Shown: piece by piece, positions 4,773 to 50,367 of the stretch
Position numbering within the stretch: the first letter of the stretch is position 1
Layout of the letters: every line of letters starts with the position of its first letter
DNA from: Haliotis rubra
Lineage: Eukaryota
DNA: 64,000 nt
Direction: 5' to 3'
NCBI RefSeq assembly: GCF_003918875.1
Contig: NW_025767224.1
Location: 620,001 to 684,000, forward strand
Program-made: the position numbers and the translations under genes
Notes under the pieces: model-generated
Database searches by the model: none
What the model was told of the DNA's origin: nothing
What the model saw: only the letters and a program-made list of their open reading frames with translations

Positions 4773-4839
4773 AGTCAAACGCACGTTCGGAGTGCACACT
4801 GCCGTCCACGGCAATTAACACCGTCTTGTGTCCACTCAT
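4773..4839 (-). CDS. Universal stress protein gene A, coding exon 1 only (remaining exons probably left of the window)
   Basis: Minus strand reads ATG...MSGHKTVLIAVDGSVHSERAFD+T followed by a GTGAGT donor (phase 1). The motif and intron position are the same as exon 1 of the three complete paralogs. No matching exon 2 was found in 1-4772. Confidence 0.85.
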
Positions 4840-5757
4840 TGTATGCCCCAGGTGTCGGACCGTCCGAGACTCACAGCCAGGAATCAACACACAGATGCAA
4901 GGAAATCAGACCTTATGTCCTTGACCTTCAGAGACCTTGTGAAGGTTGAAGGTTGTGTGGACGTTAGAGCGGAAACTGATGATAGTGATATATTTGTGTG
5001 GCATACTGTCTCGGGAAGCTGTGAGGTTACGGTAGATGGTTCTGGAAAGTAATTATGTCGACATTGACCACACAGGTGTCCCCGGCCTGCGTTCTGCTGC
5101 TGGAAGCAGTTGCGTGACTGTCGTCGTATTTCTGGTGCAGTAGCTGGATCCAGTTTATCAGGTTAATCGAAAGACATTTACTACAACCACTGCAGGGTAG
5201 GACGAAATAACCCGGCTGCTGCCATTATGTTGTAATCACTCATGGTTTTGTATTGGTCACAGTGACCTCTTGAAATGACCAGGCGTGTAAGAATAAACGT
5301 GAGAGATTTCAAACATTTTAATATATTTATTGCATGCAAACAGTGCCCTCTCAAAGTATTCTGTCCAACTTGTGAGCCGATAGTGTAATGGTATTTTTCT
5401 AGATGAATTTATTATTTACTTGTTTTACTGAATTTCAATATTTTATTGATTTAATCGTATACCCAAGATAAGGCGATCTCCCTGACAGTCGCCTGTGTTA
5501 TAGGAGCCCCCGTTTCCACCATCCATGGGTCACTATTGTGTCTGAACTCAGGCCAGCAGTGTATGACAGCTGTATGTCTGAATCAATCAATCCAGCAATG
5601 ATAAGAGGATCGATCTCAGTGATAATTGTAAATGGAGAGTGGTGATTCACAAATAGCCAGATAATGCATTTTCACTGGGCTCCATAAGCTTGCAGAACTT
5701 CAGCCCCGGGGACTTGTATAGTGAAAAGTTATATATGCATTGAAAGTATGTGTAGAC

Positions 5758-5864
5758 TGACTGACTGACTGACTGAGTTTGGTTTTACGCCGCTTTTAGC
5801 AATATCCCAGCAACATCACGGCGGGGGACACCAGAAATGGGCTTCACACATTGTGCCCATGTGG
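5758..5864 (-). mobile_element. SINE family 1, 5'-truncated, 17-bp TSD
   Basis: TSD tgaaagtatgtgtagac at 5741-5757 and 5865-5881; (cagt)n tail. Confidence 0.9.
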
Positions 5865-9800: not shown

Positions 9801-10017
9801 AAACCGGAAACAAAATGGATCGCTTCATGACGTTGGCGGACTCACTGACGGTACAAACTGATAACATTGTGCGTCTTCTTCATCTGATCTCCCGAATCTT
9901 GTTGGATGGAATACTGGACTGACCTGGGACATGTTACAGGGTAGTTGTCAGGTAACTTGTCAGTTTGGTATGGACAGTAGCATTGTCCTGACTCAATTAT
10001 GTACAGGTCGCTGTGAC

Positions 10018-11878: not shown

Positions 11879-14800
11879 TTATTTCCCCTTCTTGTCTTTG
11901 CAAACAAACACGGGAATGTGCGCGTGATGCACGATGTACTGACTCACGCTGCCTAGCAACGTCTGTCTCAGCTTGCTATGTCCACGGGTACCCGTCACGA
12001 TGCACTCAGCTTCCTCCTCCTCCGCCAGACGCACAATAGCGTTCCCGGGACTCTTGTCTGCCAGTCTCACCACCCGCCCGTGAATCTGAAAGACAAAGAC
12101 ACAGTTCGATTCTTTATGAAACGTGTATGTTGTGAAATGGATGCAGTGTTTTTCCTGTGATTTCACCCGTACAAACTTCCATGTACCAATTTGGTGCAGC
12201 CTCATTTTAAAAGGTGAAGTTGTTGCAATACCTGGTGATTGGCATTAAGTGGCTATTACAATGACTGGTCGGAGCGGAATACAGTTAATGTGTCTGCAGC
12301 ATGGTATCTTAGTTGGTGGCCACGGTAAAACCAGCATCGTCCGTTTGGCTCAAAAGCGGACCGATGAATTGCAATCTAACTCGAAAACTATTAAACATTT
12401 AGTACTCAATGAAACACTGATGATAATCAAAACATCAGACCAACTCTGTGATTTTTTTTTCAGAACTCATGTCATAAAAATAAAAAAGTTGTTTTACAAA
12501 CTATCATTAAAATCTTGACACAGTTCACTATTTGTTACGAGGGAGGGGTGCAAAGAGAGGAACAGCCAGGTGTGCAAAAAGGTTAATGAATCAATGACTT
12601 TGTCGGCACTTGTGCACGTGCTTCCCGTACAACTGGCTGTTTCCTTCCTTTGCAGTCCTCTCTCGTAACAAATAGTGAACTGTGTCAAAATTTTAATGAT
12701 AGATTGTTAAACAACTTTTTTATTTTTAGGTAAAAAATTCTGCCAAAAAATCACAGAGTTGGTCTGACGTTATGATAAGTGTTTCATGGAGTATTCTATG
12801 TTTAGTTTTTTCGAGTTAGATTGCAATTCATCGGTCCGATTTTCAGCCAAACGGACTATAGTACAATCACGCACATTCGCACGTGCATGCATATGGCGAT
12901 ATAAGTGCAATAATCTTGAACGAGAAGTTAGACACTAGTTCACTTCACCACGACATGGCCGGGACCAGCATTCAGCAATGTGCACGGATTATACAAAATG
13001 TATGATCTCAAATGATCATATTGAATAACCTTCTAAAAGTTAAATAATCCTAAACGATCATAGAAACAGTGAGCGAGTATGGTTTTACGCCGCTTTTAGC
13101 AATATTCCAGCAACATCACGGCGGGGGACACCAGAAATGGGCTTCATACATTGTATTCATGTGGGGAATCGAACACGGGTCTAAGGCGTGGCGAGCGAAC
13201 GCTTTAACCACATGGCTACCCCACCGCTCCATTTTAGAAACTGTCATGATAGTACATTACATAATTATCAGTCACAAGATTTGTAGTTAGCTTGTTTTTT
13301 AACGTTTTACTTCAGGGTTATTTGAGACACGTGAGAACGGTCGCATCTGTCTGATCCGCCTACCCCAGACTGCTCCAGACAGGTATTCAGGCTCGCGCAG
13401 ACGCTCTGTATATGATCCTCCTCTTTCCGGAACTGTTCGGCAATCTCCGTGGCGTCTGTGTGGAATGAAAACACTGAAAATAGAACAAGAAAATCGTTAG
13501 TCAACCCGACCTGTACACTGATTAAGAATAGGAATGTCCCTTCCTCGCCGAGTAGAACAGTTTGATTTGAATCAGAGAATACCACCTTGATGTAAGGAGC
13601 TTATATCGTGTGGGACTAGTCGGATACCAGCCAAGTCGGGAGTTGGCCATGATGGAGATTGGTCAACGTACGTCAACCCAGGGCTAATGAAAATATCTCT
13701 CTCGACCATAATCATCTTATGCTCGTAGTTCTTACACCGTTGTATTGAGCTGGCGACCGGCAGATATGGCTGCAGATTACATACATTACTGTAGTCAACG
13801 CTGCCCGAATATTTGGTTACAGTTCCTGTTCCGGTGGGTTCAGACACAACGTGGTAGGAACCGGATGTTGTGGGGGTAATGTCGCAGGTTCGGGTCTCTT
13901 ATTGTCCGAGACAAATATTAGGAGACGGAGTTGTTTTAAAAAGCTGTTTATTTGCCTGTAATTTGAAAAGACAACATCATGAAATGTTGATATCTGTCTG
14001 CCATCGTCCGAGGCTGACAGGTGACAATAGGTGAATTCAAATTGTCCTGACGTCACAGGCAAAAGCCCGTGAATTACCTGTGCGTCAGATACAGGTAGCG
14101 CGTACAACTTATTATTTGATACTTGAGCAGCAGCCGCAGGAGGGAATAAAGGAGAAATACAACTGCCGGCGACAGTAATGTTAACTTTTGGATGGCCATT
14201 ACTGATCACCCATCTCCATCAACCATTAACCAACAGCATCGCCAACATTGTCTCTCACCGTGACCTCCATCCAGCAACACCATTATAGTCGTCAGTACCG
14301 ATGGTGCAATCTGTATCGTACCGCTCTACGAGACTCACGATATAATGTATCGATTTACATACAATTCATTACATTGATGTGAAAACATATATATTTTTAT
14401 GTATGATAACAGAAACTGTCCCAGAACCAGTTTATGCAGGTTCCCTGGCGATTATAAACAACAGAATCTGCACAGTGCCAACAAGGTTATACGTTTCTCC
14501 ACCACAATATCCCATCTTTGCTCTTTGAAGGCTAAAAACAAACAATTTAGGATTGTGATTTACCAGCAACAAATGAGAGAATATGAAGAACTTTTGAAAT
14601 ATACTAACGAAAACAAGTAACGGGGCATAACAAAAATTGCATAAAATAAAAACATATTTGAAAAGTTATAAAAATAACAGTAAATAAACACGTAGCAAGG
14701 CGCTTTGCAGGAATTTGATGTCACGTATCGCGCGTGGTACGTGCACTTTGTACACAATGAACTTACTCACTTTTTGCATGTTTTTGACACCTGATATTGA

Positions 14801-17800: not shown

Positions 17801-20800
17801 AAGTGCGACTTGCCATAGTGTGATATGATCCATGCTTAAAACTCTGTTTTTCATCAGCCTTTACTCTGTGGACATTTTAAGCAAATGCACTTGGTATACA
17901 GGCAATGAAATATGAAGCTAAACTGGAAATTCCTGCCTGATGCGTATGCCCAGTCACTTGGGGTACTTGTATTTATGCTTGGGACATGGACGTTCATAGC
18001 ACGACATTTAAGCGTTAAATTACCGGATTCTCAATTATATTACAACACCGCTGCATCGTTAAAACACTATATATATGGTCTTGTATTTTTCCACTGAAAT
18101 ACATACTGGGTGTCCCTGCTAGTATGGATTGCGTTCATGGCTGCTGATTAATATACCGATGCTGGAGTGCACTGATCCAACTTTTATTGAAGACTTTCTC
18201 CTGGTGTTCGAAAATCTCGCCCACAGCAGACATCGCTTCATCATCATTTGCAAATAATGTTCTTTTTCATGTTTGGGAAGAGGCCAGTTAGACTACCAGT
18301 TGTCGGAGTTATACTTGTGTGGAAGCCGTGATGGATGAGTCGGTTAGATCGCTGACTTTGTGTGCTGTCGGTTAGGTGGGCCATTCTGGGAGTTTGAGTT
18401 CGAATCCCTGGATGAATTAAACCTCCGAAACTACTAGAACTAGACCTGTAAGACAGACGTGAGGCCCCATCTATAACACATATCAATCATTTGACCACAA
18501 CCAGTCGGATACCATGCAGACCATTGTTTTACCTGAGCTTGCCGAAAAATAATCTCGGTATTTGTGAGAGTAAGTGAGTGAGTGAGTTGGGTTTTACGCC
18601 GCTTTTAGTAATATTCCATCAATATCACGGCGGGGGACACCAGAACTGGGCTTTACACATTGTACCCATGTGGGGAATCGAACCCGGGCGTTCAGCGTGA
18701 CGAGCGAACGCTTTAACCACTCCGCCCCCTCGGTATTTGTGAGGAGTGGACGGGAAGTAAGCAACACCAACACTGATGTGTTGGGACACATTGTGGAGTT
18801 AACTAACCGGTGCTTGCTAACTTATGTTGTACGCATGAAGCCATGAGGACACAGAAGACACCGTTATGTTCGGCCCTGATGTCAGGTGTGTGTCAACACG
18901 ATGAACGATGCGACGCCATAATATTAACGCTCGTTTATGTCATGTCATAGTGCTCTGTCGTATGTTCTGCGTGCGGCATGAGAGTCGCTTCTTGTGTCAC
19001 GATGCCGTGATCTCCACAGATCCTTACATTCCATTCCGCTCTGGCACTTGTAGAAGGACTACAGTTCTCATTACATGATAATGCAAGTGCCAGACCACAT
19101 ACTCCACTGAAAGAGTTGTTGTGATCTTAGATTAGACTTAATGTCATGAGGTAGATGGCGTTGTCTGTCTCACTATCCCTATAGTTCTATACAATATCAA
19201 ACAAGGCCAGGTTTTTCCACAGGTTCCATCTCACTTGGGCTCATTAGGTGACTGTTTCTGTCAAAAATACTAGTATATGTGTTCTGAATAAGCGATAGAC
19301 TAATTCTGGAGCAGCACAGACAGATGTCAGTTCAGCACTGTAAAGTCGGTGCTTATATCGTAAGTGGGGGAAATGGCGAACGTGCGAGGGGAAGGCAATT
19401 CTGGGAGAGTTACGCTTGACCCCCTCCCGAAACCACCGAGTGGTTGAATAGAAACCCAGAGTGTTTGGCCTTTTGCTTATCTGCAACACACATAACCAAC
19501 AGGAGGGACAGATAAACCGTAAGTAGGTTGTTATAGATAGTATTCATTTTCATTGTTTGAAGTTGATGGAGAACGTCTATCATCCCGGCAGAGAATTTTC
19601 ACGACACTCAGCTTCTTGCTCATGTTGAATCGTTATCACTGTATGGTGTGGCTAACGTCACCGTTTTTTCAAACATACCGCTTCAACAGGCTTACCAACA
19701 CAGACATCCTTAACATGTTCATATGCATATAATGAGAATATTTCATTGTTGTTGTTGTTTTAAAGAAGCTGTTGATAGACCATGAAGTGGTCAGAAGGTA
19801 TTTGTAACATATGAGTTGTAACCACGTCATGAACTTTGACCGGATAGATATAAGACTCACTCTGGAAAGTGCAATATGAATGTATCGTTACACGGTAGAG
19901 ATAGGAACATTGTCTCATTTGAACTTTGACCAGTGGAGCTATATGATAGCGGTAGGGGATTTATTACACTGACTGTCTCAATACAATAATATGTAATTAG
20001 TTATAGTATCATGTAGATATCTACTCACGTGGAGAGTGGAAGAAGTGACCGTACTCCGGACAGTAGCCAATCACTGCTTCGTACTCGTCATTTGTTGTGT
20101 GGAGGTTAGCCACGTACCCTGTAACAGAGGGATAACTCATGGTGATTGTTAATTACAGGTTCGCAACAGACAACAGAAGAATAAGGGATGTCATCAGTCA
20201 GTCGTCGTGGACACGTAGCTCCGAGCTCAACATAATCCATTTCACGACATGCGTCTCCCACTTAAGATCTGTTTACTATGTCGTTACTGCTTAGTTGAAG
20301 TCGAATGTAGCTATTGGCAACACACACATGCCAATATTACAGTTCACTGACTCCTGGATAAATGGAACATACCAACAGATACCTTGGTAGTGAATACTCA
20401 GAACTTATCAACAACGCACCTGTTCGCTTCACGTTCAGCACGCGCGACTTTCGACGAACGTTTATGTGAAACGTATCATGTTACCAAAAACTATGGTTTG
20501 CTTCGCCAAGTTAGATTACTGAACGTCATGATGGAGAATTGTAGACCTTGGCGTAAACAACAAACAAATACACATTGACCAGACAGTCGCATGGATTGCA
20601 GATCAAAAGTGCATAATTACGAGTATTATATATAACGTCATCGAGAGAATATCCAGATGCAACCATATGCAGGGACAGATTTGATTTGACGTGAAAGGGA
20701 AAGCAGCGCACGTGGTGACAATTGGTGGTCGAAATGAACATTGCAAAAAGTTATTATTTCCTACACCCGTTCTCTTCAAGGTCAATACATGTGTGACACG

Positions 20801-29800: not shown

Positions 29801-31359
29801 TGTGTACGTTCGTGTATATATAGGTGATCCTTTTCTCACTAGGGCTGACCTGTACCTCCCACGTGCTAGGTGCCCTTCTCACACAACATGTATATACCAG
29901 GCTTGTATCTCACCCGTGCAATAGTGAAATACACTTAGTGCATATATGTATACTATTCACACTTTGCTAGGGATCAAATCATTGATTCAACAGAAAACTA
30001 TGATGTGGGGTCTAATTTGGTTTAAATATTTAAGCTTATTGTAAGCAAGGATCGTAGGTTCCAGTATGTAACTGCATCTTGTGGATCCCATACCTGACAG
30101 GTGTTGTGTACTTGTCAATCACTAGTGCCATAATTTGCAAAATGGTTGATTGGCGCCATGAAAACCATTTTTATCGTGTACTCATGTATCAAGTGCATTA
30201 GGTGAGATTAAAGTGACTGTTTGCCTAAAGAGGGGTTACCATATCATTATTTATGCAGTTTTAAATGGATACACTTTCAAATTATAAATCTATGTATAAG
30301 TAAAGTTGGCAATTTTTGTGATCCTTAGCAAAGTGTGAGTAGTATATTTTCTATATATATGGTCTGCCCCCGTACAGGTGGTTTCCATCCTTTCATTTGA
30401 GGAAAATACTACAAATGCACTGCACCTGTGTTTTTCAAAGGCTATCTGGAGGTGGGGTAGAACAGTGGTTAGAGCGTTCGTTCGTCGCGCTGAAGACCCG
30501 GGTTCGATTCCCCACATGGGTCCATTGTGTGAGCCGATTTCTGGTGTCCCCCGCCGTGATATTGCTGGAATATTGCTAAAAGCGGTGCTAAACTAAACTC
30601 ACTCACTCAGGGCATATACTGCAGCCCTACACCGGGGACAGTACCCTCATCACTGTCAATCCCACCTCAGATCTGCCTGGGGAAGGTGATACAGTATCTA
30701 CTACACTCCTACATAAGGAGACCTTCTCGCACCAAAGGGGAGTTATGATTATCAACGATTGAATCAGTAACGGACTAATCTCATGAGGGAGTATGTTCTA
30801 TTTCAGTCCGGACATTATTCATAAACATATGTCAACACCAGGAAATAACCAGAAACAGATTCCATTACACTCATTATATGTACTACCACTGTGATTTCTT
30901 TTATTTGTCTGTATTATTTCGTGAAAGGCAAAACAGCTGCTAACCTTATATGAATGGATCACTGACAATAAGCGCGATAACACCAGGTGTTCGTGAGAAG
31001 GGTAAGGGTGTCCTGTTCTACCGGTAGCACCACCACACATATATTTTTCTTTAAAAAAGTAAGTGGTTGTTGGCTAACGCCGCAAAGCAATACTCTTGTG
31101 TCATCACACGCCTGCATCTTCCCGCTGGTCCGTGCAACAGGTTCCCAATGTAAACATAATTACCACATGAAGATAGGTAGACGAGACAGGTGTACACAGA
31201 CGTTCTGTTCGGGACGCATACTGCCCTAGACGTATATCGCACTAGACAGAACAGGTGAATTCAGACTAACATGTACTCACATTCAAACGCCCTCACCGAG
31301 TAATCGCTTCCATCCATAGCTATCACAACTCGCCGAGCTGGATGTGGGTGTGCCGCCAT
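11879..31359 (-). CDS. Universal stress protein gene B, 4 exons, 161 aa
   Basis: join(31359-31281, 20118-20029, 13473-13364, 12085-11879); all GT-AG, phases 1,1,0, 486 nt. Protein MAAHPHPARRVVIAMDGSDYSVRAFEWYVANLHTTNDEYEAVIGYCPEYGHFFHSPLFSFHTDATEIAEQFRKEEDHIQSVCASLNTCLEQSGIHGRVVRLADKSPGNAIVRLAEEEEAECIVTGTRGHSKLRQTLLGSVSQYIVHHAHIPVFVCKDKKGK. It has the USP N-terminal IAMDGS motif and G-2x-G-9x-GS. Confidence 0.9.
12337..12858. mobile_element. Long-TIR MITE/foldback element in USP-B intron 3, inserted into an older SINE
   Basis: ~240-bp arms (gtccgtttggct..cggaccgatgaattgcaatctaactcg / cgagttagattgcaattcatcggtccg..agccaaacggac) with a short spacer. SINE family-3 fragments lie on both sides. 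Confidence 0.85.
13069..13230 (-). mobile_element. SINE family 1, full length
   Basis: Complete head-to-tail match to the other copies. Confidence 0.9.
14600..15722 (+). mobile_element. Decayed Tc1-family DNA transposon in USP-B intron 2
   Basis: Frameshifted transposase from 14833 (MPWLTENQ..AVGMLETG, FTDESRF, LQQDNARPH, SPDLSAIEHTWD). The right end is not recognisable. Confidence 0.85.
15829..15895 (-). mobile_element. SINE family 1, head fragment
   Basis: gtggggaatcgaacagggtcttcggcgtgacgagcgaac. Confidence 0.75.
15960..16049. mobile_element. Small hAT-like MITE
   Basis: TIR cattggcggatccag / ctggatccgcccatg; no clean 8-bp TSD. Confidence 0.55.
18325..18412 (+). mobile_element. tRNA-like (Leu/Ser-type) Pol III head, probably a further SINE family
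   Basis: gccgtgatggatgagtcggttagatcgctgac...gagttcgaatccc (A and B boxes); does not close a proper cloverleaf. Confidence 0.5.
18569..18728 (-). mobile_element. SINE family 1 with 15-bp TSD
   Basis: TSD ctcggtatttgtgag at 18554-18568 and 18729-18743. Confidence 0.9.
22121..22240. repeat. Palindromic element (probable MITE)
   Basis: ggtaatacggtctgatgtacgcctctttgtagc ... gctacaaaaaggcgtacaccagaccgtattacc. Confidence 0.65.
23308..24745 (+). mobile_element. Tc1/DD34E transposon with a nearly intact transposase pseudogene, in USP-B intron 1
   Basis: Transposase 23503-24482 has an HTH region, FSDES, FQQDND-34aa-E (WPSYSPDLNPIENVW). It carries one in-frame TAA (23740-42) and one frameshift near 24080. 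The right TIR is only partly matched, so boundaries are approximate. Confidence 0.9.
28721..28895 (-). mobile_element. SINE family 1, full length
   Basis: Complete match to the family pattern. Confidence 0.9.
29108..29272 (-). mobile_element. SINE family 1 with 11-bp TSD
   Basis: TSD tactcttaaag at 29097-29107 and 29273-29283. Confidence 0.9.
30448..30609 (+). mobile_element. SINE family 1, full length
   Basis: A/B box head, body and (cact)n tail. Confidence 0.9.
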
Positions 31360-34171: not shown

Positions 34172-34916
34172 ATTTTTATCCGCAGTCATAACCGAGTAGA
34201 GCTGTGATGATCATCGGGTCATGATGACGTCGCTTGTCTAATGTAATTATGCGTGTGTAGATTCTTCGAACAGAGAACAATAACCTTGGAGATAGATTTA
34301 CATTTATTATGACATAAGACCTACAAAGCCGTGGTCTGACCGGTTAACCATCGTTATGTTGGAAACATTCATTGAACTGTTGAAGAAACAACATACGGGC
34401 GGACAGACGATGTAACAACAATGTAAACACATTGAGGGATAAGGGACATTTGTGCATTTAATCAGGTGGGTGCACCCTTGGTCATTGCTGATACTGTTGT
34501 ATGTTGCTGTTGCTGGTACATGTTGCTGACACTGCTGCACATGTAAACTTTGTGTTGGTGACGTTGTTGTACGATGCCGACCCCGACAACTGTTGCCAAG
34601 GCCGGCGTATGTTATGACGATGTATTGCCGTCACTGTAGTGTATTGCTTAAACGCTACTATGTGTTGCTGACACTGTATATCCAGCTTACACTGTTGGAT
34701 ATCGCTGACGTAGTTGCATGTTACTGACGTCGTTGGATGTTGCAGACGCTCCTGTATGCTTAAGATATGTATATGCTGGCACTGTAGTTAATTACTGACG
34801 GTAAGATATATTTGACTGTTTCATGTTGCAGACGTTGTTGTATGTTGCTGACGTTGTTGTATATTGTCACCGTTGTAGGCGCTGACGCAATTGTATAATG
34901 ATATCCCTGACGCAGT

Positions 34917-37900
34917 CTATTGCTTCTCCTCTGTCCCGTCGTGTGGTTTCTTACAGATGAGCACTGGTACGTTTGAGTGGTGTATGATGTAGTCACTGAC
35001 GCTGCCGAGAAGTGTCCTCCTGACCTTGCCTTGACCTCTCGTGCCGGTCACTATGACGTCCACGTGCTCCGCTAATGCCGCCTTTACGATGGCGTGCCCT
35101 GCGTCGCCCGTCAGACGGAGAATACGGCCCTTGATCTGGGGAAAAAGTCCAAATCATAAAGAAATGGGCCTTTTGAGGTAAACCAGTATATGTGACGGGA
35201 CATCTTAAAGGGAGTTTGTCAGGTCATGCAAGGAGGTGTCAAATCGGATGTTATGGTCAGATATTAATGAGATTGCGTCAATCACTCAGAGGGAAGGCGT
35301 ACTGAACTCTAAATATGTTGTTAAACTAGAATAATGAGTGTTATTCTGTTGCGTAGATAACTATTCCAGGTTATTCATATTGGGGTCGAGTTATTTACAT
35401 ATATTCCAGCTATGATGTCAGCTACTTTGGTGAAACCCACTTGCCCGGCTATGATGCTGACAAACCTAAAAACACAATTGGGGTGGACAGGGATTGTCAT
35501 TCTCATCGTACGCAACCAAGACAGCTTGGCCACTCATGCCTCCGTCGGACGAAGACAAACATTGTCGTTGATCAATGCATGTTAAACCAAGCCAAACTGA
35601 GCAGAACGCAATGACTGAAGAATGGCGGTTTCCACGCAACGATTTCAAGATAACCGACTTGACAAATTTACTACGAATAATTTCGAGTTTAAACGACATC
35701 AACTTTGGAAAGTGTTCCGTTTTTCATCCGAATGATAATAATGTACTACAGAAAATGATGCAACTGTTACATTAGATCCTGACAACGCCACAAAACCCGA
35801 TTGAAATAGTTGTTCAAGATTGCAGATGTTACAGGTTGTGTCGTGTCTAAGCATACGAATTTAAAACAAACACAAAAAACACATTTATCAAGGTTTGACG
35901 AATAACATTTGTATCTTAAGTCGGTAAAGCAGTCAACATGCTTTATGGAATAAGAGCCACGCACAAACAAGACTTCCTTACATTCGGTGCGCTTAACTTG
36001 ACGAAATATTATCAGTGTCAAACCAGTTAAATTTGTAATGTTGTAATTTGAAATCCCTGTCGTTTGTTCAATACATATAGTGTATATAACTACATCATAT
36101 ACAATCAGTTACCCCTGGAAGCAGCCATTTTGCAGTCATTGTCTCGTTTTGGTCATGACCAGTGAGCTACAGTACCCAGAAATACCGAACGTCGATAGGG
36201 GGGAATTGTGAATAGAAAGGGAGACTACTCTAGCGAACTTATTTAAGTGTGAGCGTGTGTGAGAGCCCACCCCGGATCCTGCGAGTTTCTCCTTCAGCTT
36301 GGCGATGATGATGTTGATCTGCTGCTCCTCCTTCTTTATCAGCTGCGCCACCAGGGACGGGTCGCTGGACATCACAGCTGCAACAGACCACGGCGTCACG
36401 ACAAGAGTTCAACTCATTTGCTTACAAGAGTTTACAAACATTCACATGCATATGTTTGTTTGTTTGTGGAGTAACGCCGCACCCAACAATATTCCTGGGT
36501 GCCGTTGTACAAAACAACCTTAGCACTAAGACTAAGTCTATGTTAAGATATGGGAGTTACGGTCACTCTAGTGCTAAGACTACCTTAAGTCTATGTTAAG
36601 ATATGGGAGTTACGGTCAACTCAGTGCTAAGACTAAGTCTATGTTAAGATATGGGAGTTACGGTCACCCTAGTGCTAAGATCGCTCTGTACAACGGCACC
36701 CAGCTATATAGCGGCGGTCTGGAATACAGTCTGGACCAGACAATCCAGTGATCAACATCGTAAGCGGTGTTGATTACGTGAATATGTGGACATGTGTACT
36801 GTGACAATGTAAGCACACTGTGAAACCTTCTCACAACAATGTCGTACCGGTGCTGGTAGTAATTGTTAAGGTAACTGTAATTGCTTACCTAAGTATATGT
36901 TTGTACTGATATTTAAAAATCATCATCGAGCGCACAACTCTACACACTGAGTTGAATAAACAGGGCTACTGAGTAAACCTTATCCCGGGAACGGTGGTAG
37001 TCATAGCAACATCACAGTGGATGGGATAATTTGGGAGTCGTAAATGATATAGAAACAGGCCTGAACGGTTGTTCCAAAAATATGACAAAGAAGCTACATA
37101 AACGTGACGGTGTTCTTGTCGTAGGAATAGAACAGTGCACTTAGTACGGCAGTCATAGAAACAAGATAATGTGCTAACGGTAATCATAGAAACGTGGCAC
37201 TGGTGTATGCCGCAGGTTTTTTTGTGTTCTTTAAGAGAAGCAACGTGGAGAATATGGCTGTCTACGAACCAGGGTCCCGTTCCTCAAAGCGATCGTAGCG
37301 CTACGACAGTCGTAAGTCTATGTTAAAGTATGGGAGTTACGATCACCTTAGCGCTACGATCGCTTTGTGAAATGGGACCCTCTACAGTAGAAAACAAACA
37401 CCATTGTCGTAGAAACAATGGAGAATTGCTAACGGTAACAGATAACATTACTTTCGAACATCGTTGTGTCAAACTTTGATGAGTCGAACTTACGGTTTAA
37501 TCGAAATTTCTTATACCTGCTTATACCGTATGTTGTACTCATTTTACCGTTATGTCAAACCTCAGATAACACAAAATATTTACCTCGGTCCCTTTAACCT
37601 CGGCACAACGGTGTATTCCAGTCACTATATGTCACTTTGCATCCTCGATAATCGAGGGTAATATATGTCCGTTCTTGCCATAAATACCCTGGATCCATTC
37701 GATACCGTTATAGTGCAAACTATTTCAAAACGTTCTTTAAAACTTCATTATTCAAAATACTTAATTGTTTCAGTTCATGTCCAGAGTGCAAAGTTCGGTG
37801 TATTCAGTCTTATCATAAACCCCACTCCGGGCAGGACCCTTGAATGCAATCTGTAAATTTCAGTTATTACCTCCTTACGTCGGCGGATCTTACAACATGC

Positions 37901-40258
37901 CGTAATATCTCTATCTATAAAACCTGACATAGGATCAGTCAGAAGGACGGTCTCCTGTCAAGGAGAAGGGCCCAGATCATCGTTCGGCTAGTCGTGGCGT
38001 TGACCAAGGCCGTGGACTCACCAACGACTACGTCGACGATGGAGAATCGCCGTCAGACTTCTGCATTTGTGTAAAGGACAGAACGGGTCTCCTCACCGGG
38101 AACATTGGCTACTCGGTCCCGTGCGTTCTGTCACGTTATTACCATGTGCCATTTCGATCACTAGTCCCCTAACCATACTAAACACAGCTGCTGTCGATAC
38201 CAACTCCACACCTTTTGCCTTCCGTCCGTTATCCACCATCCCCAGCTACCAGCCGAGAGCACCAAAAACTAACACCCTTGGACAGAACCATACCTGTAGC
38301 TTTGGTCTTGAAAGATGTTACGTCAATATGCAATCAAACCGATTTCAAGCTTTTCACAATAAAGGTCATCCTCGGTACTCACGGGAATGTGTCAGTGCGC
38401 TGTAGTCCGGGCAGTGAACTATGATCACCTCATTGTCTGGCCTGTGGACAGTATCCATGTACCCTGAAGCAAGTAAAGTTATTGAATGCACACGTTTAAC
38501 CACAAAGTCATCATTTACTCACGATGCCACTGTTCATGGCGTCATGCGGGCAGTGGGGTAGCGTAGTGGTTAAAGCGTTCGCTCGTCACGCCGAAGACCC
38601 GGGTTCGATTCCCCACATGGATGCAGTGTGTGAAGCCCATTTCTGGTGTCCCCCGCCGTGATATTGCTGGAATATTGCTAAAAGCAGCGTCAAACCATAG
38701 TTTTACTCACTTACTCACTCACTCACCCACTGATGACGTGCGCATTTAAAGCAGAATGTGGGAGTCGAAACATGGAAAACTACTCACTATGTCTTGGAAG
38801 AAGTTACGTAGCGACAGAGACACGGGGAGGGTAACGTATGTCAGGTAATACATGTATATACAGAAAGGAAATATGAAGTTCAGCCTCACCAACAGGTGTT
38901 TGAAGGCGACTTTGAAAGATTTTAATCTAGTCACCCACGTTTAAGGGTTGTAGGGCTGTATATGAGGTGGTTGGGTACTCTTGTGTTCAAAACGTTCGCT
39001 CGTCAAGCCCAAGGGTACAATGTGTAAAGCCCATTTATGTAGTCTACAGTCGTATAGCTGTAATATCGCTAATATTGTGTAAAACCTCACTCACTTTATC
39101 ACAACTCACACTATGCTTTACTTTACCAAAGGGACATCTTGGTTATTGGTGTTTATTGTCACAGTCAGCAGTACGGTATGGTATTTCATAGCGACATGTA
39201 AATAATCAAGTCTGCCATAGTCAAACCAATGGTTGATGTCATGAACACATTGACACATCCCTGGGGGTCAGCTACACACACTCGGCCACTTCACGGACCC
39301 ATTACATCCACATTAAAGACTCATGTCTTACCCATAGGCTGCTTAGCTATACATTCCCAAATCCTCAACCCTGATTCACTGTTGGGCGTTAACTTCGTTT
39401 CCTATATATATATATTATCCCCTATGTAAGTAAATGCTTCTCAGTTTCCATAGGCATTCAACGGAATCTCTTCACCTCGTATCCATTTATTTCCAGCTAT
39501 TTCCAGTTAATTGAAATAAGGCTTCCAAATCACCTGTTCCGTTGCTCAAGTAATCGCCTTAGTAACAGGAAGCGACTTCACATGCGCACCTAATTATAAA
39601 GTGCATTATCAGCATTACCGCGACCAGTATCTCTGCACGTGACGGGCGATAATGGGTCAGTTCACACGGCCTGTGGTTCAAAATGGCTTCCACATGGCGC
39701 TCAGCACGTATCAATACATAGTGAGGTCAGGAACTTGATCAATTATTATCGATCAAATAAATGATGTAGGGAAATATTATGACACATTATACATTGTAGT
39801 CGCCATCACTCTGTTGATGAGGCCATGTATATATGTGATATCTGTGCATGTTAACGCCAGTAATGCACGATAACGGTATTAGTGTAAACAACATGCTTAT
39901 CAACATCATGAAATAGATCGGTGTGTATTCCCAACATCTGTAACGGCAAATCTCTCTTCCAGCCCGATATATTACATTATCATGCCTCTTGATTTACCTA
40001 GATGTTTAAACCATGGATCTAAAAATACATTTCGATGGCAATAATGCGCTGGTTTTCTCGGAGGAACAAATACAAATAAAAACGACGATCAAACCGGCTC
40101 TTGTAAAAACGTGCTAAACGCGTTCCAACTACCTGGTGTGTGTCTAGATAAGCTGGTGGAATATCTTGTTATTGGGTTTACTTACAGTCGAAGGCGTACA
40201 CGGAGTGGTCGCTCCCGTCCATCGCCACCAAAACCTTCCTGTGTTCCTTTGCCGACAT
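34917..40258 (-). CDS. Universal stress protein gene C, 4 exons, 159 aa
   Basis: join(40258-40186, 38463-38383, 36377-36271, 35135-34917); GT-AG, phases 1,1,0, 480 nt. Protein MSAKEHRKVLVAMDGSDHSVYAFDWYMDTVHRPDNEVIIVHCPDYSALTHSPVMSSDPSLVAQLIKKEEQQINIIIAKLKEKLAGSGIKGRILRLTGDAGHAIVKAALAEHVDVIVTGTRGQGKVRRTLLGSVSDYIIHHSNVPVLICKKPHDGTEEKQ. Confidence 0.93.
36497..36701. mobile_element. PIF/Harbinger-like MITE with internal triplication, inserted in a SINE
   Basis: TIR gggtgccgttgtaca / tgtacaacggcaccc. The core agtctatgttaagatatgggagttacggtca is repeated 3x. It interrupts a family-2 SINE tail (36455-36760, minus). Superfamily is inferred from the GGG termini. Confidence 0.75.
37272..37380. mobile_element. 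MITE of the same family as 36497-36701
   Basis: TIR gggtcccgtt..caaagcgatcgtagcgcta / tagcgctacgatcgctttg..aatgggaccc, with the same agtctatgttaa..atgggagttacg core. Confidence 0.75.
38548..38725 (+). mobile_element. SINE family 1, full length
   Basis: A/B box head, body and (cact)n tail. A second degenerate copy lies at ~38963-39095. Confidence 0.9.
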
Positions 40259-42390: not shown

Positions 42391-42771
42391 CTGTTTGAGC
42401 CGGAGACTAAGCGTGGTGGTAACAAAGTACCAGACTTGTCATCTCCGTCGTAGTGATCGGATATACTGGTCAAATCATGTCAAAATGTATTAATTATTTA
42501 ATCATTACGACCATTACGATTTCACATATATCTCATTTATTTCCAGTTAATACATTGTTTTACGAAGAAATCATCACCATAAAACACTCAATAAAATCAT
42601 ATAAAAGCAAAAAGCATTCGGTTTCTCCCTGAGCCACTTTCCACAAAGTTAAGTCAGAGCTTGTTAGCTGCATGTTAAACATATTGGAGTTTGCTGGAAT
42701 CGCACTGAGGGACTGAACCCAACTCACGATCGCCACTGGAAGGGGATGTCTGTTGCGTCACGGATACAATT

Positions 42772-43018
42772 GTGTGAAGCTGGTCTAAAGAGGAAATGGC
42801 GTGAAGCTGGTCTAACGAGGAAATGGTGTGAAGCTGGTCTAAAGAGGAAATGGTGTGAAGCTGGTCTAAAGAGGAAATGGTGTGAAGCTGGTCTAAAGAG
42901 GAAATGGTGTGAAGCTGGTCTAACGAGGAAATGGTGTGAAGCTGGTCTAAAGAGGAAATGGTGTGAAGCTGGTCTAACGAGGAAATGGTGTGAAGCTGGT
43001 CTAAAGAGGAAATGGTGT
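42772..43018. repeat. 27-bp minisatellite (~9 copies)
   Basis: Unit gtgtgaagctggtctaa(a/c)gaggaaatg. Confidence 0.95.
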
Positions 43019-44237: not shown

Positions 44238-47200
44238 TCACACTTGCTGTTGCTGTTCCTTGGGCCTCTGACAAACAACGACGGGCACGTGTGAGTGATG
44301 TACGATGTAGTCGCTAACGCTGCCGAGTATCTTCCTACTCATCATGCCGCGTCCGCGCGTTCCCGTGACGACGTAATCAACCTCTTCTTCCTCCGCTGCC
44401 TTCACCAGAGACGAACCAGGATGACCATTCAGGCGCAGAATACGACCCGGTACCTACATGCATAGACTGACTTAGTCCCACAAATAACGTCAATATATTC
44501 TTTAAAATATGTTTATAAAAATGCATAAATATTACATAAAAGTCCAAAACAATTCTAAGATCTGAGGCAATATAGGCTTGCACAGTAATTCTGGAGTTGG
44601 ACTTCTTTCTGCATTCAAACTATGGGCTACAAAGCTATAATGCAAGCCCATATCTTAAAGTCACTTATAATGTATGGACCCCTTACAGCATCTGATCTAT
44701 GTCGTAACATTATCTATAGGAGATGTCTGTCAGTTAGATGTCATTCTGAATCGCGGAATTTACCAAACTGCACAAATCATTTTGTCAGCGAAATATACTA
44801 AGCAGCAAATTTTCCTTCGCAGAAACGTATAACTGTAAACACATTTAATGTTTTGATTGTATATGTTGGACACCATCTCCAACTTTACGTGAGCAAAGAC
44901 ATTCCTTCCCAAACTCAGAATTGAACCCAGGAAATGGTCTCAAAAACGCAACCTGACCTCGGAGATGGTACGGTGTTCTCCATGTTTTTCATGCAACTCA
45001 TGCTGCACGTGCTGTTCACAAGGTCCAGCCCTATAAATTGCCCCCCTAAACCTGGTTGAAACAATCACATTACAACGTCAGCAGGATGCCCCTTCTCACG
45101 ACAGCTCAGAGGAACCGGGCGTTAGGAAGAATTGAAGCTGGCCACACTGCACAAGCTGTTGCCAATCACTTCCAGGACAACGTTCTACAGGCTGCAGCAA
45201 CCTTTCTGGGCCATCAACACCACAATGATCGCCCCGTACTGGCAGACCAAAACAAGACCGCCATGTTGTGCGACAGCATGTACAGAATCCCTTTATGCAG
45301 GCATCCGAAACAGCACGACAGACAGGGGGAACACACGGAAGACCAATCAGTACTGATACAGTACGCCGACGTCTTAACAGCGGGAACCGCCATTGCCGTA
45401 GACCTTACCGTGGACCTATCCTCACCCTCGTCCTCGGAGTAAACGTCTACAGTTTGCCCTACAACACCAAAAACTGGCGATTCAGGCAGTGGAGAACTGT
45501 TCTTTTAACAGATGAGAGTCGGTACTGCGTATCAACGGCAGAACAATAATATGGCGACGACGTGGCCAGCACAACTCAGACCAATGTTGTATGGAAAGAG
45601 ACTCATGGGGAAGTGCAAGCATCATGGTAAGCGATGGAATAGGCCTGAACCAGAAAGTGGGTCCTGTGGCGTTCCAAAACCTTGGTCCAGGGAGACGAGG
45701 CGGCATCACAGCGGTGCGCTACGTCGACCCATCTCTCACACCCAACGTCATACCAAATTTCGCACGTCAGCGGAACAATATTTTCCAGCATGATAACGCT
45801 CGGGACCATACTGCCAGAGATACACGGGACTTCCTGCAGCAGAACGGTGTCAACATTATGTAGTGGCCAGGCCTAAGTCCTGATTTAAACCCAATTGAAC
45901 ATCTTTGGGTTGAAATACAGAGGAGACTGAATAATGTCATACCAAGGCCAATCACAGCCGATTTATTTCGCCAGGTTTTTGTCCGCGTGTGGTTCCATGT
46001 GCCAATGGCCTTCATCGATCGATTGGTGCCTTCCATGCTTAGACGCTGTGCTGCAGTTATTGGTCGCACTAGATACTGAACTCAAGGGTCTGAATGGACT
46101 GCAAACGTACACGTAATGTCTTGAAATTGTGCTGAGTTATTCATTGATGTGCCAAGATATTGCACACAAAAACAATTTTTGATCCGCTTATTATGTCAAT
46201 TTCTGTAATGATTTAATTACAGTGCCTATCTAATTTTGAATTCGTACTGGCGTTTGGGGTTTTTTTGCTGCTGAGTATACATGCCTGCCCCCAAAAGCAT
46301 TGCAATAAATACAACATTACTTGGTTTCTGGTTTACCTCCACACTGAACAATATTCCATACCTCTTGTGATGTACTCATACTTATCTATACATTTAATAA
46401 CTAACACAATGCATTAAATAAACTAAAGCATTTATATGCATTACGATTGGAACTTTGGAAATACAGTATTCGAACAAAGCTCGTGACATAGTAGCCGCGT
46501 GACTTATCTTACCCCGGTTTTAGTCAGCCTCTCCCGCAGTTTGTCGACAATGACGCCGATTTTGACAGCCTCTTCTCGAACGAGCTCGGCAACCAGGGAC
46601 GGATCGCCACTGATACCGGCTGAAGATGAAGATGGGCAATATGTTATGGTTACATACGTAGTCATTTGACTATTCAGAAATAAACACTAAATTATCTCTA
46701 GGAATGGATTCCGGGCGCACTCTAATAAACCTAAGCTTGAGGGTCTTTCCAAGCGTACTGCTGAAATATTGCTAAAATTGACGAAAACCCTAATCCACAA
46801 TAAAGGCTCTAATTGTTATTCAGTTATGGGTAATAAAAATTCGTTGGATTGATTGTGGACCTTTGTTACTCACGCGTGTGATAGATGGCGCTGTAGTCGG
46901 GACAATGCGCCACCACTACGTCATTCCCCATCCGGTGAAGCCTGTCCATGTACCCTGCAAATATACTTCAAGGTAAACACGTTATGGTGGTACAAGAGTG
47001 AGAGAGTGAGTATGGTTTTACGCTGCTTGTAGTTACATCACAACCAGTGGGCTTCACACAATGTACGCATGTGGGGAACGAACACTCTGACCACTACGCT
47101 GCACCGCCGCCCCAGGTGGTACAAGAAAAAGTATACAGATGCACACGTGGTCCTCTGTCACGCAATCAGGTGCGTAGCAAGCCAATGTTTTCGTGTAAGC

Positions 47201-50200
47201 CCCATAGGTTGAAAAGCTTTATATTTAGATAATTTTGAGGGCTTGCCCAACCTTTTCATCAACAATCATGTGTAGCCCGGATCTGTTTTTCATAATGGTA
47301 GCTACGCCCCTGACAATCTCTGTGTCATCCTCGATAATCTCTCGGGCATTCGTTCCGATAAATCACTAGTACCCTAGATGCATCTACGGTAATTTAGTTA
47401 CCTCCCTTTGCTTGCTTTTTATCTAATCAGGTGTCTTCGTGGGAAAGTTGAGCGTACCAATCACAACTCACTTCCGTTTCTTCGGTAAACAGTTGTTAAG
47501 AGGTTGGAGTTATTGCCTATATATTTGAAGGTTTCTGACATGTCAATTTATCAGTATGATTTTCCCAATAAATCTGATTCGCACAGCGATCAAACCTTCG
47601 CGGATGCGGCCGCAATCTTTGTTGACACTGGCAAGCTCGATTGTAACGGCTTAATCTGATTGACTACTGTGAGAAGGCGGAGCCAGCAAAGGGAGTAATA
47701 AAAAAATATCGGGCCGAGCCGTAGATGCATCCAGGGTATACCAGGTATACCCCGAAGATTATCGAGGATGCCTCTGTGTTGATGGTAAAGCTGTTGTGGA
47801 GGTTGTTTCATTTATATCATGGCGTATCAGCTTAATTAATGTGGGAAGAAAAACAGTGGGTGTTTATCCCGTAAGGGGATCAAACCAAGCTGCATACCAG
47901 GATTCGACCCCACTGTGAACAATGTAAAGTGCAAAGCAGCCACCAATCAGCCACAGCGGATGAATGATTGTTCTCATACTTATCAGGTTCTTTCATGAGT
48001 TTCCGGTAAAAATAATATTTAATACCAATCGTTATATTGCGAAAGACATTCAGAGATAAACTGAACTTAAAAATGAACTGTAAAGTCGACATAAAATTTT
48101 GGCAACGTATTGTTATCAATCTGTGACGTTTCATCCTATTGCACGACGAAGCATTGCTTAGAATGAACAAGTAGAATCGACAAAACAAACGCAGGAAAAA
48201 GTGAAAACTGTTATATTATTCATGATCTTTCATCCTTAAGATTAAATATAACTAAATTCTTTAACGCTGTACTCAATTTCTCATAAATACCACACGAAAG
48301 GTAAATGGGCTTCTCCACATCAAACCAGTGGTGAAGGTCTCAAGCTTTTACTGGCGATACCAGTTCGACAAGATACACAGAATACCATAGGTGTACGCTA
48401 GTACCATAGGACATGTAAACACACACACCACACACGTGACCTGCTAGGCAAGGCACTAACGTTCCACGAAGCAATTTATGCGTCACCACAGCCTGAGTCT
48501 ATTAAGGATGGGAGCTCCGGAGACCACGTCGCTGGGATGACTTTGTGAATCGTATCCCAGTACAGATATACCACAACAAACATTGGAATGAAAACATGTC
48601 TGGAATTGAGGGAACGCTATACCGGGGATAACCTGTCGCTCTATTTAAAAGAGAGTGAAATATATAACTGACATATATGTTGATACGTTAACTGACAGAA
48701 TCCATACGTCTACCAGTCTTCTGATTGTGAGAGAAGTGCTATCGACGAAGAGGAATTCCTCGTGTGAGAGTACAATATACCACTGTCAACACTAACAGAA
48801 ACCTGCATGTTCCAAATATATATATTGCACATGCTCTGTTGCAAAAGCAATTTATCCAAAATGCCAGTCTCTGTAATCAACCTGCCCCTAAATCACCAGC
48901 AGCCTGTACATATTCCGCATTTCATTGTAGCTGTTATTGACTCGTTAGCACGAGAGCCTTTCAACAAGAATTACCCATCAATTACACATTGATATATTCG
49001 ATCGCGGTAACAGATTAGCAGGATCGATCGCACTGTGCTGAGATATTATCCCACGTTTTTCCTGGGGCCTTATTGAATCACTTCAGCGGCTTCACACATT
49101 CACTAGAACACATATCAACATGATTAAAATTGACACTCTGGTTAACATTGTACAACTGTGGTGTTGCAGGCGTTGTGTCTCGCCGATGATGTTGTGCACG
49201 GGCGTTCTATGAATACCTCAGTTCAGCAGTTCTACATACTCGCCGATCATGTTGTGCACGGGCGTTCTATGAATACCTCAGTTCAGCAGTTCTACATACT
49301 CGCCGATCATGTTGTGCACGGGCGTTCTATGAATACCTCAGTTCAGCAGTTCTACATACTCGCCGATCATGTTGTGCACGGGCGTTCTATGAATACCTCA
49401 GTTCAGCAGTTCTACATACTCGCCGATCATGTTGTGCACGGGCGTTCTATGAATACCTCAGTTCAGCAGTTCTACATACTCGCCGATCATGTTGTGCACG
49501 GGCGTTCTATGAATACCTCAGTTCAGCAGTTCTACACACCAGTTCATTACATATCGGAATTTCCAGTGAGCTGTGAAGTTATGTATTACGTACAAAACTG
49601 AACCGTATCTTAATAGTAGCAAGTTTATATATAGTATTTTATGAAAATTGCAAACCATCACCCCTGAGTAAGCTCCCCTTACATACACACGCACAACATG
49701 CATCACACACATAAGCTACACGCCACCCACCAAGAAAATATACACTAAGCAAAAGACATACTATCGCATACATACTCCCACATACACATCTAAATATGTT
49801 CTCCGTACANNNNNNNNNNNNNNNNNNNNNNNNNNNNNNNNNNNNNNNNNNNNNNNNNNNNNNNNNNNNNNNNNNNNNNNNNNNNNNNNNNNNNNNNNNN
49901 NNNNNNNNNNNNNNNNNNNNNNNNNNNNNNNNNNNNNNNNNNNNNNNNNNNNNNNNNNNNNNNNNNNNNNNNNNNNNNNNNNNNNNNNNNNNNNNNNNNN
50001 NNNNNNNNNNNNNNNNNNNNNNNNNNNNNNNNNNNNNTACATATAAACGGTAACCACACAAGATATCACACTGCTGACTGTCAGGTTCCCTGTACACAAG
50101 TATCGTGAGATGTCGATGTACATAAGACTTACTAAGAGGCACAATGTTAACAAGCTGTATTAATCCAACCGTAGACGATAGACAAGCGACTGCTATCGAG

Positions 50201-50367
50201 AAGCCGCCCTCCTGTCATGTTGATGCTAGCATCATGTCAGTGTCGCTGCACTCCAATATACGGCCAGAGTGGTAACTAACCTACAGGTACTTACAGTCAA
50301 ATGCGTAGTTGGAATGGTCGCTGCCATCCATGGCTATCAGAACTTTACAACAGTGCTCGGCCGACAT
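44238..50367 (-). CDS. Universal stress protein gene D, 4 exons, 158 aa
   Basis: join(50367-50295, 46954-46874, 46619-46513, 44453-44238); GT-AG, phases 1,1,0, 477 nt; intron 1 spans an N gap. Protein MSAEHCCKVLIAMDGSDHSNYAFDWYMDRLHRMGNDVVVAHCPDYSAIYHTPGISGDPSLVAELVREEAVKIGVIVDKLRERLTKTGVPGRILRLNGHPGSSLVKAAEEEEVDYVVTGTRGRGMMSRKILGSVSDYIVHHSHVPVVVCQRPKEQQQQV. Confidence 0.92.
44794..46279 (+). mobile_element. Decayed Tc1/DD34E transposon with both TIRs, in USP-D intron 3
   Basis: Termini tatactaagcagcaaa / tttgctgctgagtata with flanking TA. Broken transposase 45086-~46079 (MPLLTTAQRNRALG, LTDESRY, FQHDNAR-34-E in SPDLNPIEHLW). Confidence 0.9.
46998..47114 (-). mobile_element. SINE family 1, internally deleted, 12-bp TSD
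   Basis: TSD ggtggtacaaga at 46986-46997 and 47115-47126. Confidence 0.8.
49178..49536. repeat. 60-bp tandem repeat (6 near-identical copies) in USP-D intron 1
   Basis: Unit cgccgatcatgttgtgcacgggcgttctatgaatacctcagttcagcagttctacatact. Confidence 0.95.
49810..50037. other. Assembly gap (N run)
   Basis: 228 Ns. Confidence 1.

What the first reader, a model, noticed from the sequence alone, without database searches (positions are those of the whole stretch)
4773..50367. Hidden tandem cluster of at least four spliced universal stress protein genes
Seen: four co-oriented minus-strand paralogs with the same exon-1 junction (splitting the Trp codon). The three complete ones share phases 1,1,0 and an intact G-2x-G-9x-GS motif. 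C and D are closest to each other and B is more divergent. Established: USP domains are best known in bacteria and plants and are patchily distributed in animals (retained and expanded in cnidarians and lophotrochozoans, lost in many others); this motif marks the ATP-binding subtype. Inference: an old local expansion forming a diversified stress-response locus whose function in animals is poorly characterised.
Basis: partly seen in the sequence, partly recalled or inferred. Interest (0 to 1): 0.7.

Follow-up and report, generated by a model that had tools for sequence, protein, structure and literature searches.

The report
Abalone universal stress protein gene cluster
The window holds a real tandem row of four spliced universal stress protein genes of the blacklip abalone, but three of them are already annotated with exactly these gene models in the public RefSeq annotation, so the finding is correct and ordinary.

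Summary
Four minus-strand genes (A-D) each have four coding exons, GT-AG introns and phases 1,1,0. In all four, the first intron splits a Trp codon (T|GG). B, C and D lie wholly in the window. A has only exon 1 in it, and I completed A from the 10 kb to the left (151 aa). All four last exons pass the Pfam Usp cut-off. B, C and D keep G-2x-G-9x-GS, while A has GH at that place.

The genome is Haliotis rubra. My joined models of B, C and D are identical to RefSeq proteins XP_046542589.1, XP_046542590.1 and XP_046542601.1 on this contig. Orthologues exist in three other abalones. So nothing is hidden.

The N gap lies in intron 1 of D. Orthologues from other assemblies carry the same exon 1-exon 2 join, and RNA-like contigs end exactly at the borders of D exon 3.

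Trees show that B, C and D form one old gastropod lineage, which fits local duplication. A is a distant, fast-evolving member whose nearest kin lies on another contig. The Trp-splitting junction is family-wide (at least 26 USP last exons in several clusters). The ATP-binding and stress roles are inferred, not shown. Interest is low.

The parts
4773..4839 (-). Gene A, coding exon 1 (ATG at 4839; ends in T of a split Trp codon). Exons 2-4 lie left of the window at L001:3026-3118, 1761-1858, 1235-1432 (genome C2334:613026-613118, 611761-611858, 611235-611432).
   Evidence: Pfam Usp on the last exon 43.4 bits; motif reads G-2x-G-9x-GH
11879..12085 (-). Gene B exon 4 with stop codon; ATP motif GTRGHSKLRQTLLGS at 11948-11992
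   Evidence: (64.3 bits)
13364..13473 (-). Gene B exon 3 (long helix; substitution hot spot between abalone clades)
20029..20118 (-). Gene B exon 2
31281..31359 (-). Gene B exon 1 (ATG at 31359). The whole joined model is identical to XP_046542589.1 (P0130).
   Evidence: 86.4 bits, profile 3-141
34917..35135 (-). Gene C exon 4 with stop codon; ATP motif GTRGQGKVRRTLLGS at 35001-35045
   Evidence: (61.7 bits)
36271..36377 (-). Gene C exon 3
38383..38463 (-). Gene C exon 2
40186..40258 (-). Gene C exon 1 (ATG at 40258). The whole joined model is identical to XP_046542590.1 (P0010).
   Evidence: 104 bits; fold model pLDDT 86.6, best match 1MJH
44238..44453 (-). Gene D exon 4 with stop codon; ATP motif GTRGRGMMSRKILGS at 44319-44363
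   Evidence: (62.6 bits)
46513..46619 (-). Gene D exon 3; both borders are used in RNA-like contigs of runs X1-X3
   Evidence: records 8, 15, 24 match 46510-46619 with 0 mismatches
46874..46954 (-). Gene D exon 2 (Met27 in it is the start of RefSeq isoform X2, XP_046542602.1)
49810..50037 (.). Assembly gap (228 N) inside D intron 1; not filled and not looked up
50295..50367 (-). Gene D exon 1 (ATG at 50367), on the far side of the gap. The whole joined model is identical to XP_046542601.1 (P0018).
   Evidence: 94.9 bits
40269..40276 (-). CACGTGAT, 18 nt before the ATG of C; the same 8-mer sits 21 nt before the ATG of D at 50381-50388
   Evidence: function untested

Best explanation
This is a tandem array of four co-oriented, single-domain universal stress protein (PF00582) genes on a 3.12 Mb contig of the blacklip abalone Haliotis rubra. 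Each gene has four coding exons. Exon 1 encodes strand 1 with the D-G-S loop, exon 2 strand 2, exon 3 the long helix, and exon 4 strands 3-5 with the nucleotide-binding loop. B, C and D arose by old local duplications. B split from the C/D ancestor before Haliotis and Gigantopelta diverged, and C split from D before the living Haliotis species diverged. A is a distant, fast-evolving family member that lies beside them. Shown here: the gene structures, the domain, the motif, the fold of C, identity to RefSeq models, orthologues in other abalones, and spliced transcripts of D. Inferred from the family: B, C and D make small cytosolic alpha/beta proteins that pair as dimers and bind ATP or AMP without a catalytic role, acting as nucleotide-dependent switches in stress physiology. 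A, with GH in place of GS, may bind nucleotide weakly or not at all.
For: The window is G000:C2334:620001-684000, and four Usp last exons lie on that contig. All four genes have complete ORFs with GT-AG introns and phases 1,1,0. Pfam Usp matches exon by exon and over the full length of the identical public proteins: 86.4, 104 and 94.9 bits over profile 3-141. Models B, C and D are identical to H. rubra RefSeq proteins on a contig of 3,124,254 bases. Orthologues exist in H. rufescens, H. asinina and H. cracherodii, and within each species they lie on a single contig. The motif aligns column for column with the G-S-H-G...G-S loop of MJ0577. The AlphaFold model of C has pLDDT 86.6, and its best solved match is 1MJH (TM 0.71/0.78), followed by other nucleotide-bound USPs. 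In the tree of 131 mollusc USPs the B/C/D clade has support 88, B+Gigantopelta 99 and the gastropod-wide C/D clade 95. Runs X1-X3 lack the unique intron DNA but hold contigs that stop exactly at the borders of D exon 3.
Against: No binding, dimer or stress-induction data exist for these proteins. The only expression evidence is for D, from runs whose RNA nature the tool only guesses. C and D as sisters has weak support (57 full length, 89/78 last exon). A was not found in any protein list, so neither its annotation nor its expression is known. Its long branch (1.55) and altered motif could mean decay. The true length and content of D intron 1 are unknown because of the gap.
Confidence: 0.88

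Rival explanations
1. One or more copies, above all A, are decaying or non-functional duplicates rather than working genes.
For: A has the longest branch in both trees (0.88, 1.55). It has a weaker Pfam score (43.4 bits) and GH instead of GS in the nucleotide loop. A decayed Usp last exon does exist in another cluster, at C2173:246475-246631.
Against: A keeps a complete 151-aa ORF, four canonical splice-site pairs and the family phases 1,1,0. B, C and D are conserved among four abalone species.
Confidence: 0.12
2. The genes are bacterial contamination or a recent horizontal transfer, as the RefSeq names (TeaD-like, YxiE-like, Sll1388-like) might suggest.
For: The nearest solved structures and the name-giving SwissProt proteins are all bacterial or archaeal.
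Against: Each gene has three spliceosomal introns at conserved positions. They sit in a 3.1 Mb animal contig among transposon remnants and an LRR gene. There are over a hundred mollusc homologues and clear gastropod orthologues.
Confidence: 0.01
3. D is a chimera made by scaffolding: exon 1 beyond the N gap belongs to another gene or haplotype, and the true D starts at Met27 in exon 2 (RefSeq isoform X2).
For: A 228-N gap separates exon 1 from exons 2-4. RefSeq also lists a 132-aa isoform X2 that lacks exon 1. The exon 1-exon 2 joint itself was not printed by read laying.
Against: Orthologues from the independent assemblies of H. asinina and H. rufescens join a 23/24 and a 22/24 identical exon 1 to the same exon 2. 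The phase and the split Trp codon fit as in eight other family genes. The 1975-nt contig of run X2 leaves 146 nt beyond exon 3, which equals exon 2 (81) plus 65 nt. That run also covers about 74 nt in the bin that holds exon 1.
Confidence: 0.04

Closest known systems
RefSeq gene models of Haliotis rubra: XP_046542589.1 (TeaD-like), XP_046542590.1 (YxiE-like), XP_046542601.1 and XP_046542602.1 (YxiE-like X1, Slr1101-like X2)
   Same: Residue-for-residue identical to my joined models of B, C and D, and to D residues 27-158. They lie on a contig of the same length as the window's contig.
   Different: Nothing differs for B, C and D. Whether A is also annotated could not be checked, because its joined model has no reference.
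MJ0577 of Methanocaldococcus jannaschii (PDB 1MJH), the ATP-binding type of USP
   Same: The five-stranded parallel sheet fold is shared: it is the best Foldseek match to the model of C, with TM 0.71/0.78. G-2x-G-9x-GS aligns with the ATP loop of MJ0577. The motif and the ATP-switch idea are as reviewed in PMC10003552.
   Different: Identity is only about 27%. The abalone genes are spliced animal genes, and no ligand has been measured. A lacks the final Ser/Thr.
Tandem USP clusters of flatworms (PMC5793430)
   Same: It is a lophotrochozoan USP family in which about half of the genes sit in clusters made by tandem duplication, with degeneration of the ATP motif in some paralogues.
   Different: Flatworm USP genes are intronless or have one intron near residue 75 and spread largely by retrotransposition. 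The abalone genes keep three introns (phases 1,1,0). That paper found no orthology between mollusc and flatworm USPs.
Cnidarian USPs (Foret et al. 2011, Mol Biol Evol 28:153, as cited in PMC5793430)
   Same: It is an animal USP family with many paralogues and an uneven distribution among phyla.
   Different: In Hydra 22 of 24 genes are intronless. The paper itself is not held in the library, so its statements on distribution rest on the citing papers and on my own knowledge.

Membership tests
Universal stress protein family (Pfam PF00582) | Profile match above the curated cut-off (24 bits) | tested here: met
   Last exons: B 64.3, C 61.7, D 62.6, A 43.4 bits. Full-length public proteins identical to B, C, D: 86.4, 104, 94.9 bits over profile 3-141/141.
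Universal stress protein family (Pfam PF00582) | Alpha/beta fold with a five-stranded parallel sheet like MJ0577 | tested here: met
   Tested for C only. AlphaFold2 model: pLDDT 86.6, pTM 0.81, order E-H-E-H-H-E-H-E-H-E. Top Foldseek matches are 1MJH, 1WJG, 3TNJ, 2GM3, 5AHW and 3HGM.
ATP-binding (MJ0577-like) USP subtype | G-2x-G-9x-G(S/T) loop | tested here: met
   Met in B, C and D, aligned to the MJ0577 loop. A reads G-S-R-G, then nine residues, then G-H, so A does not meet it.
ATP-binding (MJ0577-like) USP subtype | Measured binding of ATP or AMP; dimer in solution | not testable with these tools
   No biochemical data. Inferred from motif and fold only.
Stress-response genes | Induction by heat, hypoxia, oxidative or other stress | not tested
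It shows presence of spliced D contigs, not regulation.
Locally duplicated tandem gene cluster | Members are each other's closest kin within the genome | tested here: inconclusive
   B, C and D form a clade that excludes the two other H. rubra paralogues in that protein set, those of C1358 and C2173 (SH-aLRT 88). A does not join them: its last exon pairs with C2143:293k (95/82), and the four window genes are one group in 0% of bootstrap trees.

The most novel reading that the evidence does not exclude
Two details may hold something new. (1) Gene A may be a neofunctionalised animal USP that has given up the canonical nucleotide loop (GS to GH) while keeping an intact spliced ORF. (2) C and D keep an identical CACGTGAT (E-box / MiT-TFE / HIF-like core) about 20 nt before their start codons despite only 57% protein identity. 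That could tie this pair to one defined bHLH stress pathway in molluscs.
Probability: 0.15. Interest if true: 0.3.

Novelty: already known. Interest (0 to 1): 0.12.

Why it matters
It matters little beyond bookkeeping. For abalone biology, the cluster gives a clean set of old paralogues on which the unknown role of animal USPs could be tested: three with the nucleotide loop and one without. No paper found here describes abalone USP genes.

Tried and rejected
Synteny therefore rests on shared contig lengths in the protein tables.

The first two word searches found only B's relatives. The third, seeded with the Patella protein P0006, found the RefSeq proteins of C and D.

Exons 1-3 taken singly are too short for Pfam: there were no hits, or only 14-15 bits at profile positions 3-20. 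The joined models were not sent to any search tool. For B, C and D the identical public proteins were used by id instead. For A, which has no reference, the joined step was left out.

Read laying did not print the exon joints of D, because the listed rows were taken up by repeat-derived joints of the DNA run X5. The exon 1-exon 2 join is therefore inferred from contig arithmetic and orthologues, not read directly.

I looked for a second copy of B exon 3 that might explain its divergence from H. rufescens. There is none in the window or the genome.

Heat-shock, CCAAT, TATA, ARE and MRE patterns before the start codons showed nothing consistent.

The Foret 2011 paper is not held. The large protein search (search of protein representatives) was not used, because the family assignment was not open. 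The N gap was neither filled nor looked up.
Full report
WHAT IS THERE. The window is G000:C2334:620001-684000 of a 1.378 Gb assembly in 2,855 contigs. It has one run of N, at 49810-50037. A six-frame search of the whole genome with Pfam PF00582 found 26 last exons above the cut-off. Four lie on this contig, all on the minus strand. Three are in the window (11897-12076, 34950-35129, 44271-44441) and one is 8.6 kb to the left of it.

GENE MODELS. I seeded with a public abalone protein (P0001) and then read the splice sites directly. This gave three complete genes:
- B: 31281-31359 | 20029-20118 | 13364-13473 | 11879-12085, 161 aa.
- C: 40186-40258 | 38383-38463 | 36271-36377 | 34917-35135, 159 aa.
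- D: 50295-50367 | 46874-46954 | 46513-46619 | 44238-44453, 158 aa.

Gene A starts at 4839, and its exon 1 ends at 4773. After fetching the 10 kb to the left (L001), I found its other exons at L001:3026-3118, 1761-1858 and 1235-1432, giving a 151-aa ORF. All twelve introns are GT..AG and the phases are 1,1,0 in all four genes. Exon 1 always ends in T and exon 2 always begins with GG, so a Trp codon is split. A search with all four models found no further USP exon or fragment in the window.

FAMILY. The last exons score 64.3 (B), 61.7 (C), 62.6 (D) and 43.4 (A) bits against PF00582, whose cut-off is 24. The first exons of C and A touch profile positions 3-20 weakly, and the other short exons give nothing. 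I sent no typed joined protein to any search tool. The joined step became possible by reference only, once public proteins identical to the models had been found. Those proteins score 86.4, 104 and 94.9 bits over profile 3-141/141. For A the joined step was left out.

B, C and D carry G-2x-G-9x-GS (window 11948-11992, 35001-35045 and 44319-44363). This stretch aligns column for column with the ATP loop of MJ0577. A has G-S-R-G, nine residues, then G-H. An AlphaFold2 model of C built on 38 aligned homologues (pLDDT 86.6, pTM 0.81) has the USP strand-helix order. Its best solved match is 1MJH (TM 0.71/0.78), followed by other USPs solved with AMP, ATP or cAMP. By sequence the nearest solved chains are 3LOQ, TeaD 3HGM, 1MJH and 1WJG.

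THE GAP. The 228 N lie in intron 1 of D, between exon 1 (50295-50367) and exon 2 (46874-46954). No coding base is missing, and the frame closes across the intron as it does in the paralogues. Three independent lines bear on continuity:
- RefSeq isoform X1 of this assembly equals my joined model.
- The D orthologues of H. asinina and H. rufescens, from other assemblies, join an exon 1 that is 23/24 and 22/24 identical to the same exon 2.
- In runs X1-X3 (small runs that the tool guesses to be RNA), depth is zero over the unique intron DNA at 47801-49800, where the DNA run X5 mostly has 50-75. Yet contigs of 217, 1975 and 800 nt match 46510-46619 with no mismatch. That stretch is D exon 3 plus three bases (GTA) shared by the donor and the start of exon 4.

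The 1975-nt contig leaves 146 nt on the 5' side, which equals exon 2 (81 nt) plus 65 nt. The same run covers about 74 nt in the bin that holds exon 1. The joint rows themselves were not printed, so the exon 1-exon 2 join in RNA is inferred. The length and content of the intron stay unknown.

IDENTITY OF THE GENOME AND PRIOR ANNOTATION. A word search seeded with a Patella USP returned H. rubra proteins from a contig of 3,124,254 bases. That is the length of C2334. My models C and D are identical to P0010 and P0018. Model B is identical to P0130, and D residues 27-158 are identical to P0135. Their accessions are XP_046542590.1, XP_046542601.1, XP_046542589.1 and XP_046542602.1.

Orthologues of B and C are listed for H. 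rufescens, H. asinina and H. cracherodii, and of D for H. rufescens and H. asinina. Within each species they are on one contig. The cluster is therefore not hidden: three of its four genes are in the public annotation with exactly these structures.

HISTORY. Pairwise identities are C-D 57%, B-C 45%, B-D 42% and A-others 32-35%. In a tree of 131 mollusc USPs (quick IQ-TREE, SH-aLRT):
- Haliotis C and D are sisters (57, weak) inside a clade that holds all major gastropod groups (95).
- B groups with a Gigantopelta protein (99).
- The B clade is sister to the C/D clade (88).
- The two other H. rubra paralogues in that protein set (P0045 of C1358, P0054 of C2173) fall outside.

This fits two old local duplications. 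B split from C/D before Haliotis and Gigantopelta parted, and C split from D before the living abalones parted.

A is different. It has a branch length of 1.55 and no close kin in that set. In a tree of the last exons of 26 genomic copies, A pairs with C2143:293k (95/82), and the four window genes never form one group in bootstrap trees. That tree has only 70 columns, so most of its deep nodes are open.

The Trp-splitting junction is not a mark of this locus. Four genes of the C2173 cluster show the same T|GT...AG|GG, and the C2143 gene has the matching exon 2 head (AG|GG before TAT). The genome holds several such clusters: C2173, C1358, C1035, C2522, C2709 and the near-identical copies on C393, C150 and C235.

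HOW IT LIKELY WORKS. Shown: four spliced genes for single-domain USPs, the domain, the motif, the fold of one of them, conservation among abalones, and spliced contigs of D. Inferred from what is established for the family (MJ0577 binds ATP without being an ATPase; other USPs bind AMP or cAMP; many act as dimers and as nucleotide-dependent switches; reviewed in PMC10003552): B, C and D are small cytosolic nucleotide-binding proteins with a regulatory role under stress. A may have lost or changed nucleotide binding. Nothing here measures binding, partners or induction.

LITERATURE. Tandem clusters of USP genes are described in flatworms, together with decay of the ATP motif in some paralogues. 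That paper took mollusc USPs from public sets by PF00582 and cites Foret et al. 2011 for the uneven distribution in animals and the mostly intronless Hydra genes (PMC5793430). An oyster genome paper counts the USP domain among stress-related families (PMC6289776). Eight held papers mention both 'universal stress protein' and 'abalone', and none treats abalone USP genes. Foret et al. is not held.

VERDICT. The novelty class is 'already known' and interest is low. Earlier notes of this scan on the same window (a small LTR element at 53316-53677) and just beyond it (an IAP gene) do not bear on the USP genes. A word search of the scan's notes found no earlier USP finding.

Noticed in passing
window 13364-13473 (B exon 3): Eight of the ten residue differences between B of H. 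rubra and B of H. rufescens fall in the 37 residues of exon 3 (Fisher p 1.3e-4). H. cracherodii shows the same eight, while H. asinina has three. C and D show no such clustering. No second copy of the exon exists in the genome.
   Followed up: partly
window 40269-40276 and 50381-50388, minus strand: C and D share CACGTGAT (11 of 12 bases with its flank, CACGTGAT-TAC) 18 and 21 nt before their ATG. A, B and three genes of the C2173 cluster lack it. It could be a kept bHLH (E-box / MiT-TFE / HIF-like) site or part of the 5' UTR.
   Followed up: partly
L001:1235-1432 (genome C2334:611235-611432), minus strand: The last exon of gene A has GH instead of GS at the end of the nucleotide loop and sits on a very long branch. 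Its nearest kin by last exon is on contig C2143 at about 293 kb, which keeps GS.
   Followed up: partly
window 46874-46954: RefSeq isoform X2 of D (132 aa) starts at Met27 in exon 2, so it lacks strand 1 and the D-G-S loop. An alternative 5' exon must exist somewhere upstream. It was not located.
   Followed up: no
window 32392-34172; also 3299-4229, 42768-43018, 49179-49536: There are minisatellites between and inside the genes: a 40-bp unit x 44 between B and C, a 22-bp unit x 42 in A intron 1, a 27-bp unit x 9 downstream of the D stop codon (between C and D), and a 60-bp unit x 6 next to the N gap. A contig of DNA run X5 skips 240 bases (four units) of the last array, which suggests a copy-number difference between animals.
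   Followed up: no
window 56555-57592, plus strand: An open frame of 345 aa is made of leucine-rich repeats (LRR_8, 127 bits). It is a separate gene on the other strand, upstream of D.
   Followed up: no
window 14921-15448, plus strand (B intron 2): This is a remnant of a Tc3/mariner-type transposase (HTH_Tnp_Tc3_2, 31.8 bits). B's long introns (11.2 and 6.6 kb) and D's introns carry repeats that draw very high depth in DNA run X5.
   Followed up: no
G000 contigs C393, C150, C235 (L010-L014); C1358 (L006, L007); C1035 (L017, L018): Five USP last exons on three short contigs are nearly identical to each other, and two further pairs are identical or nearly so. These are either very recent duplicates or uncollapsed haplotypes, so the count of 26 copies is not a clean gene number.
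   Followed up: no
G000:C2173:246475-246631 (L030): A decayed USP last exon (loop reads TGTRN..., with a frame break) lies inside the C2173 cluster, which has four intact genes on the plus strand. It is a likely pseudogene.
   Followed up: partly
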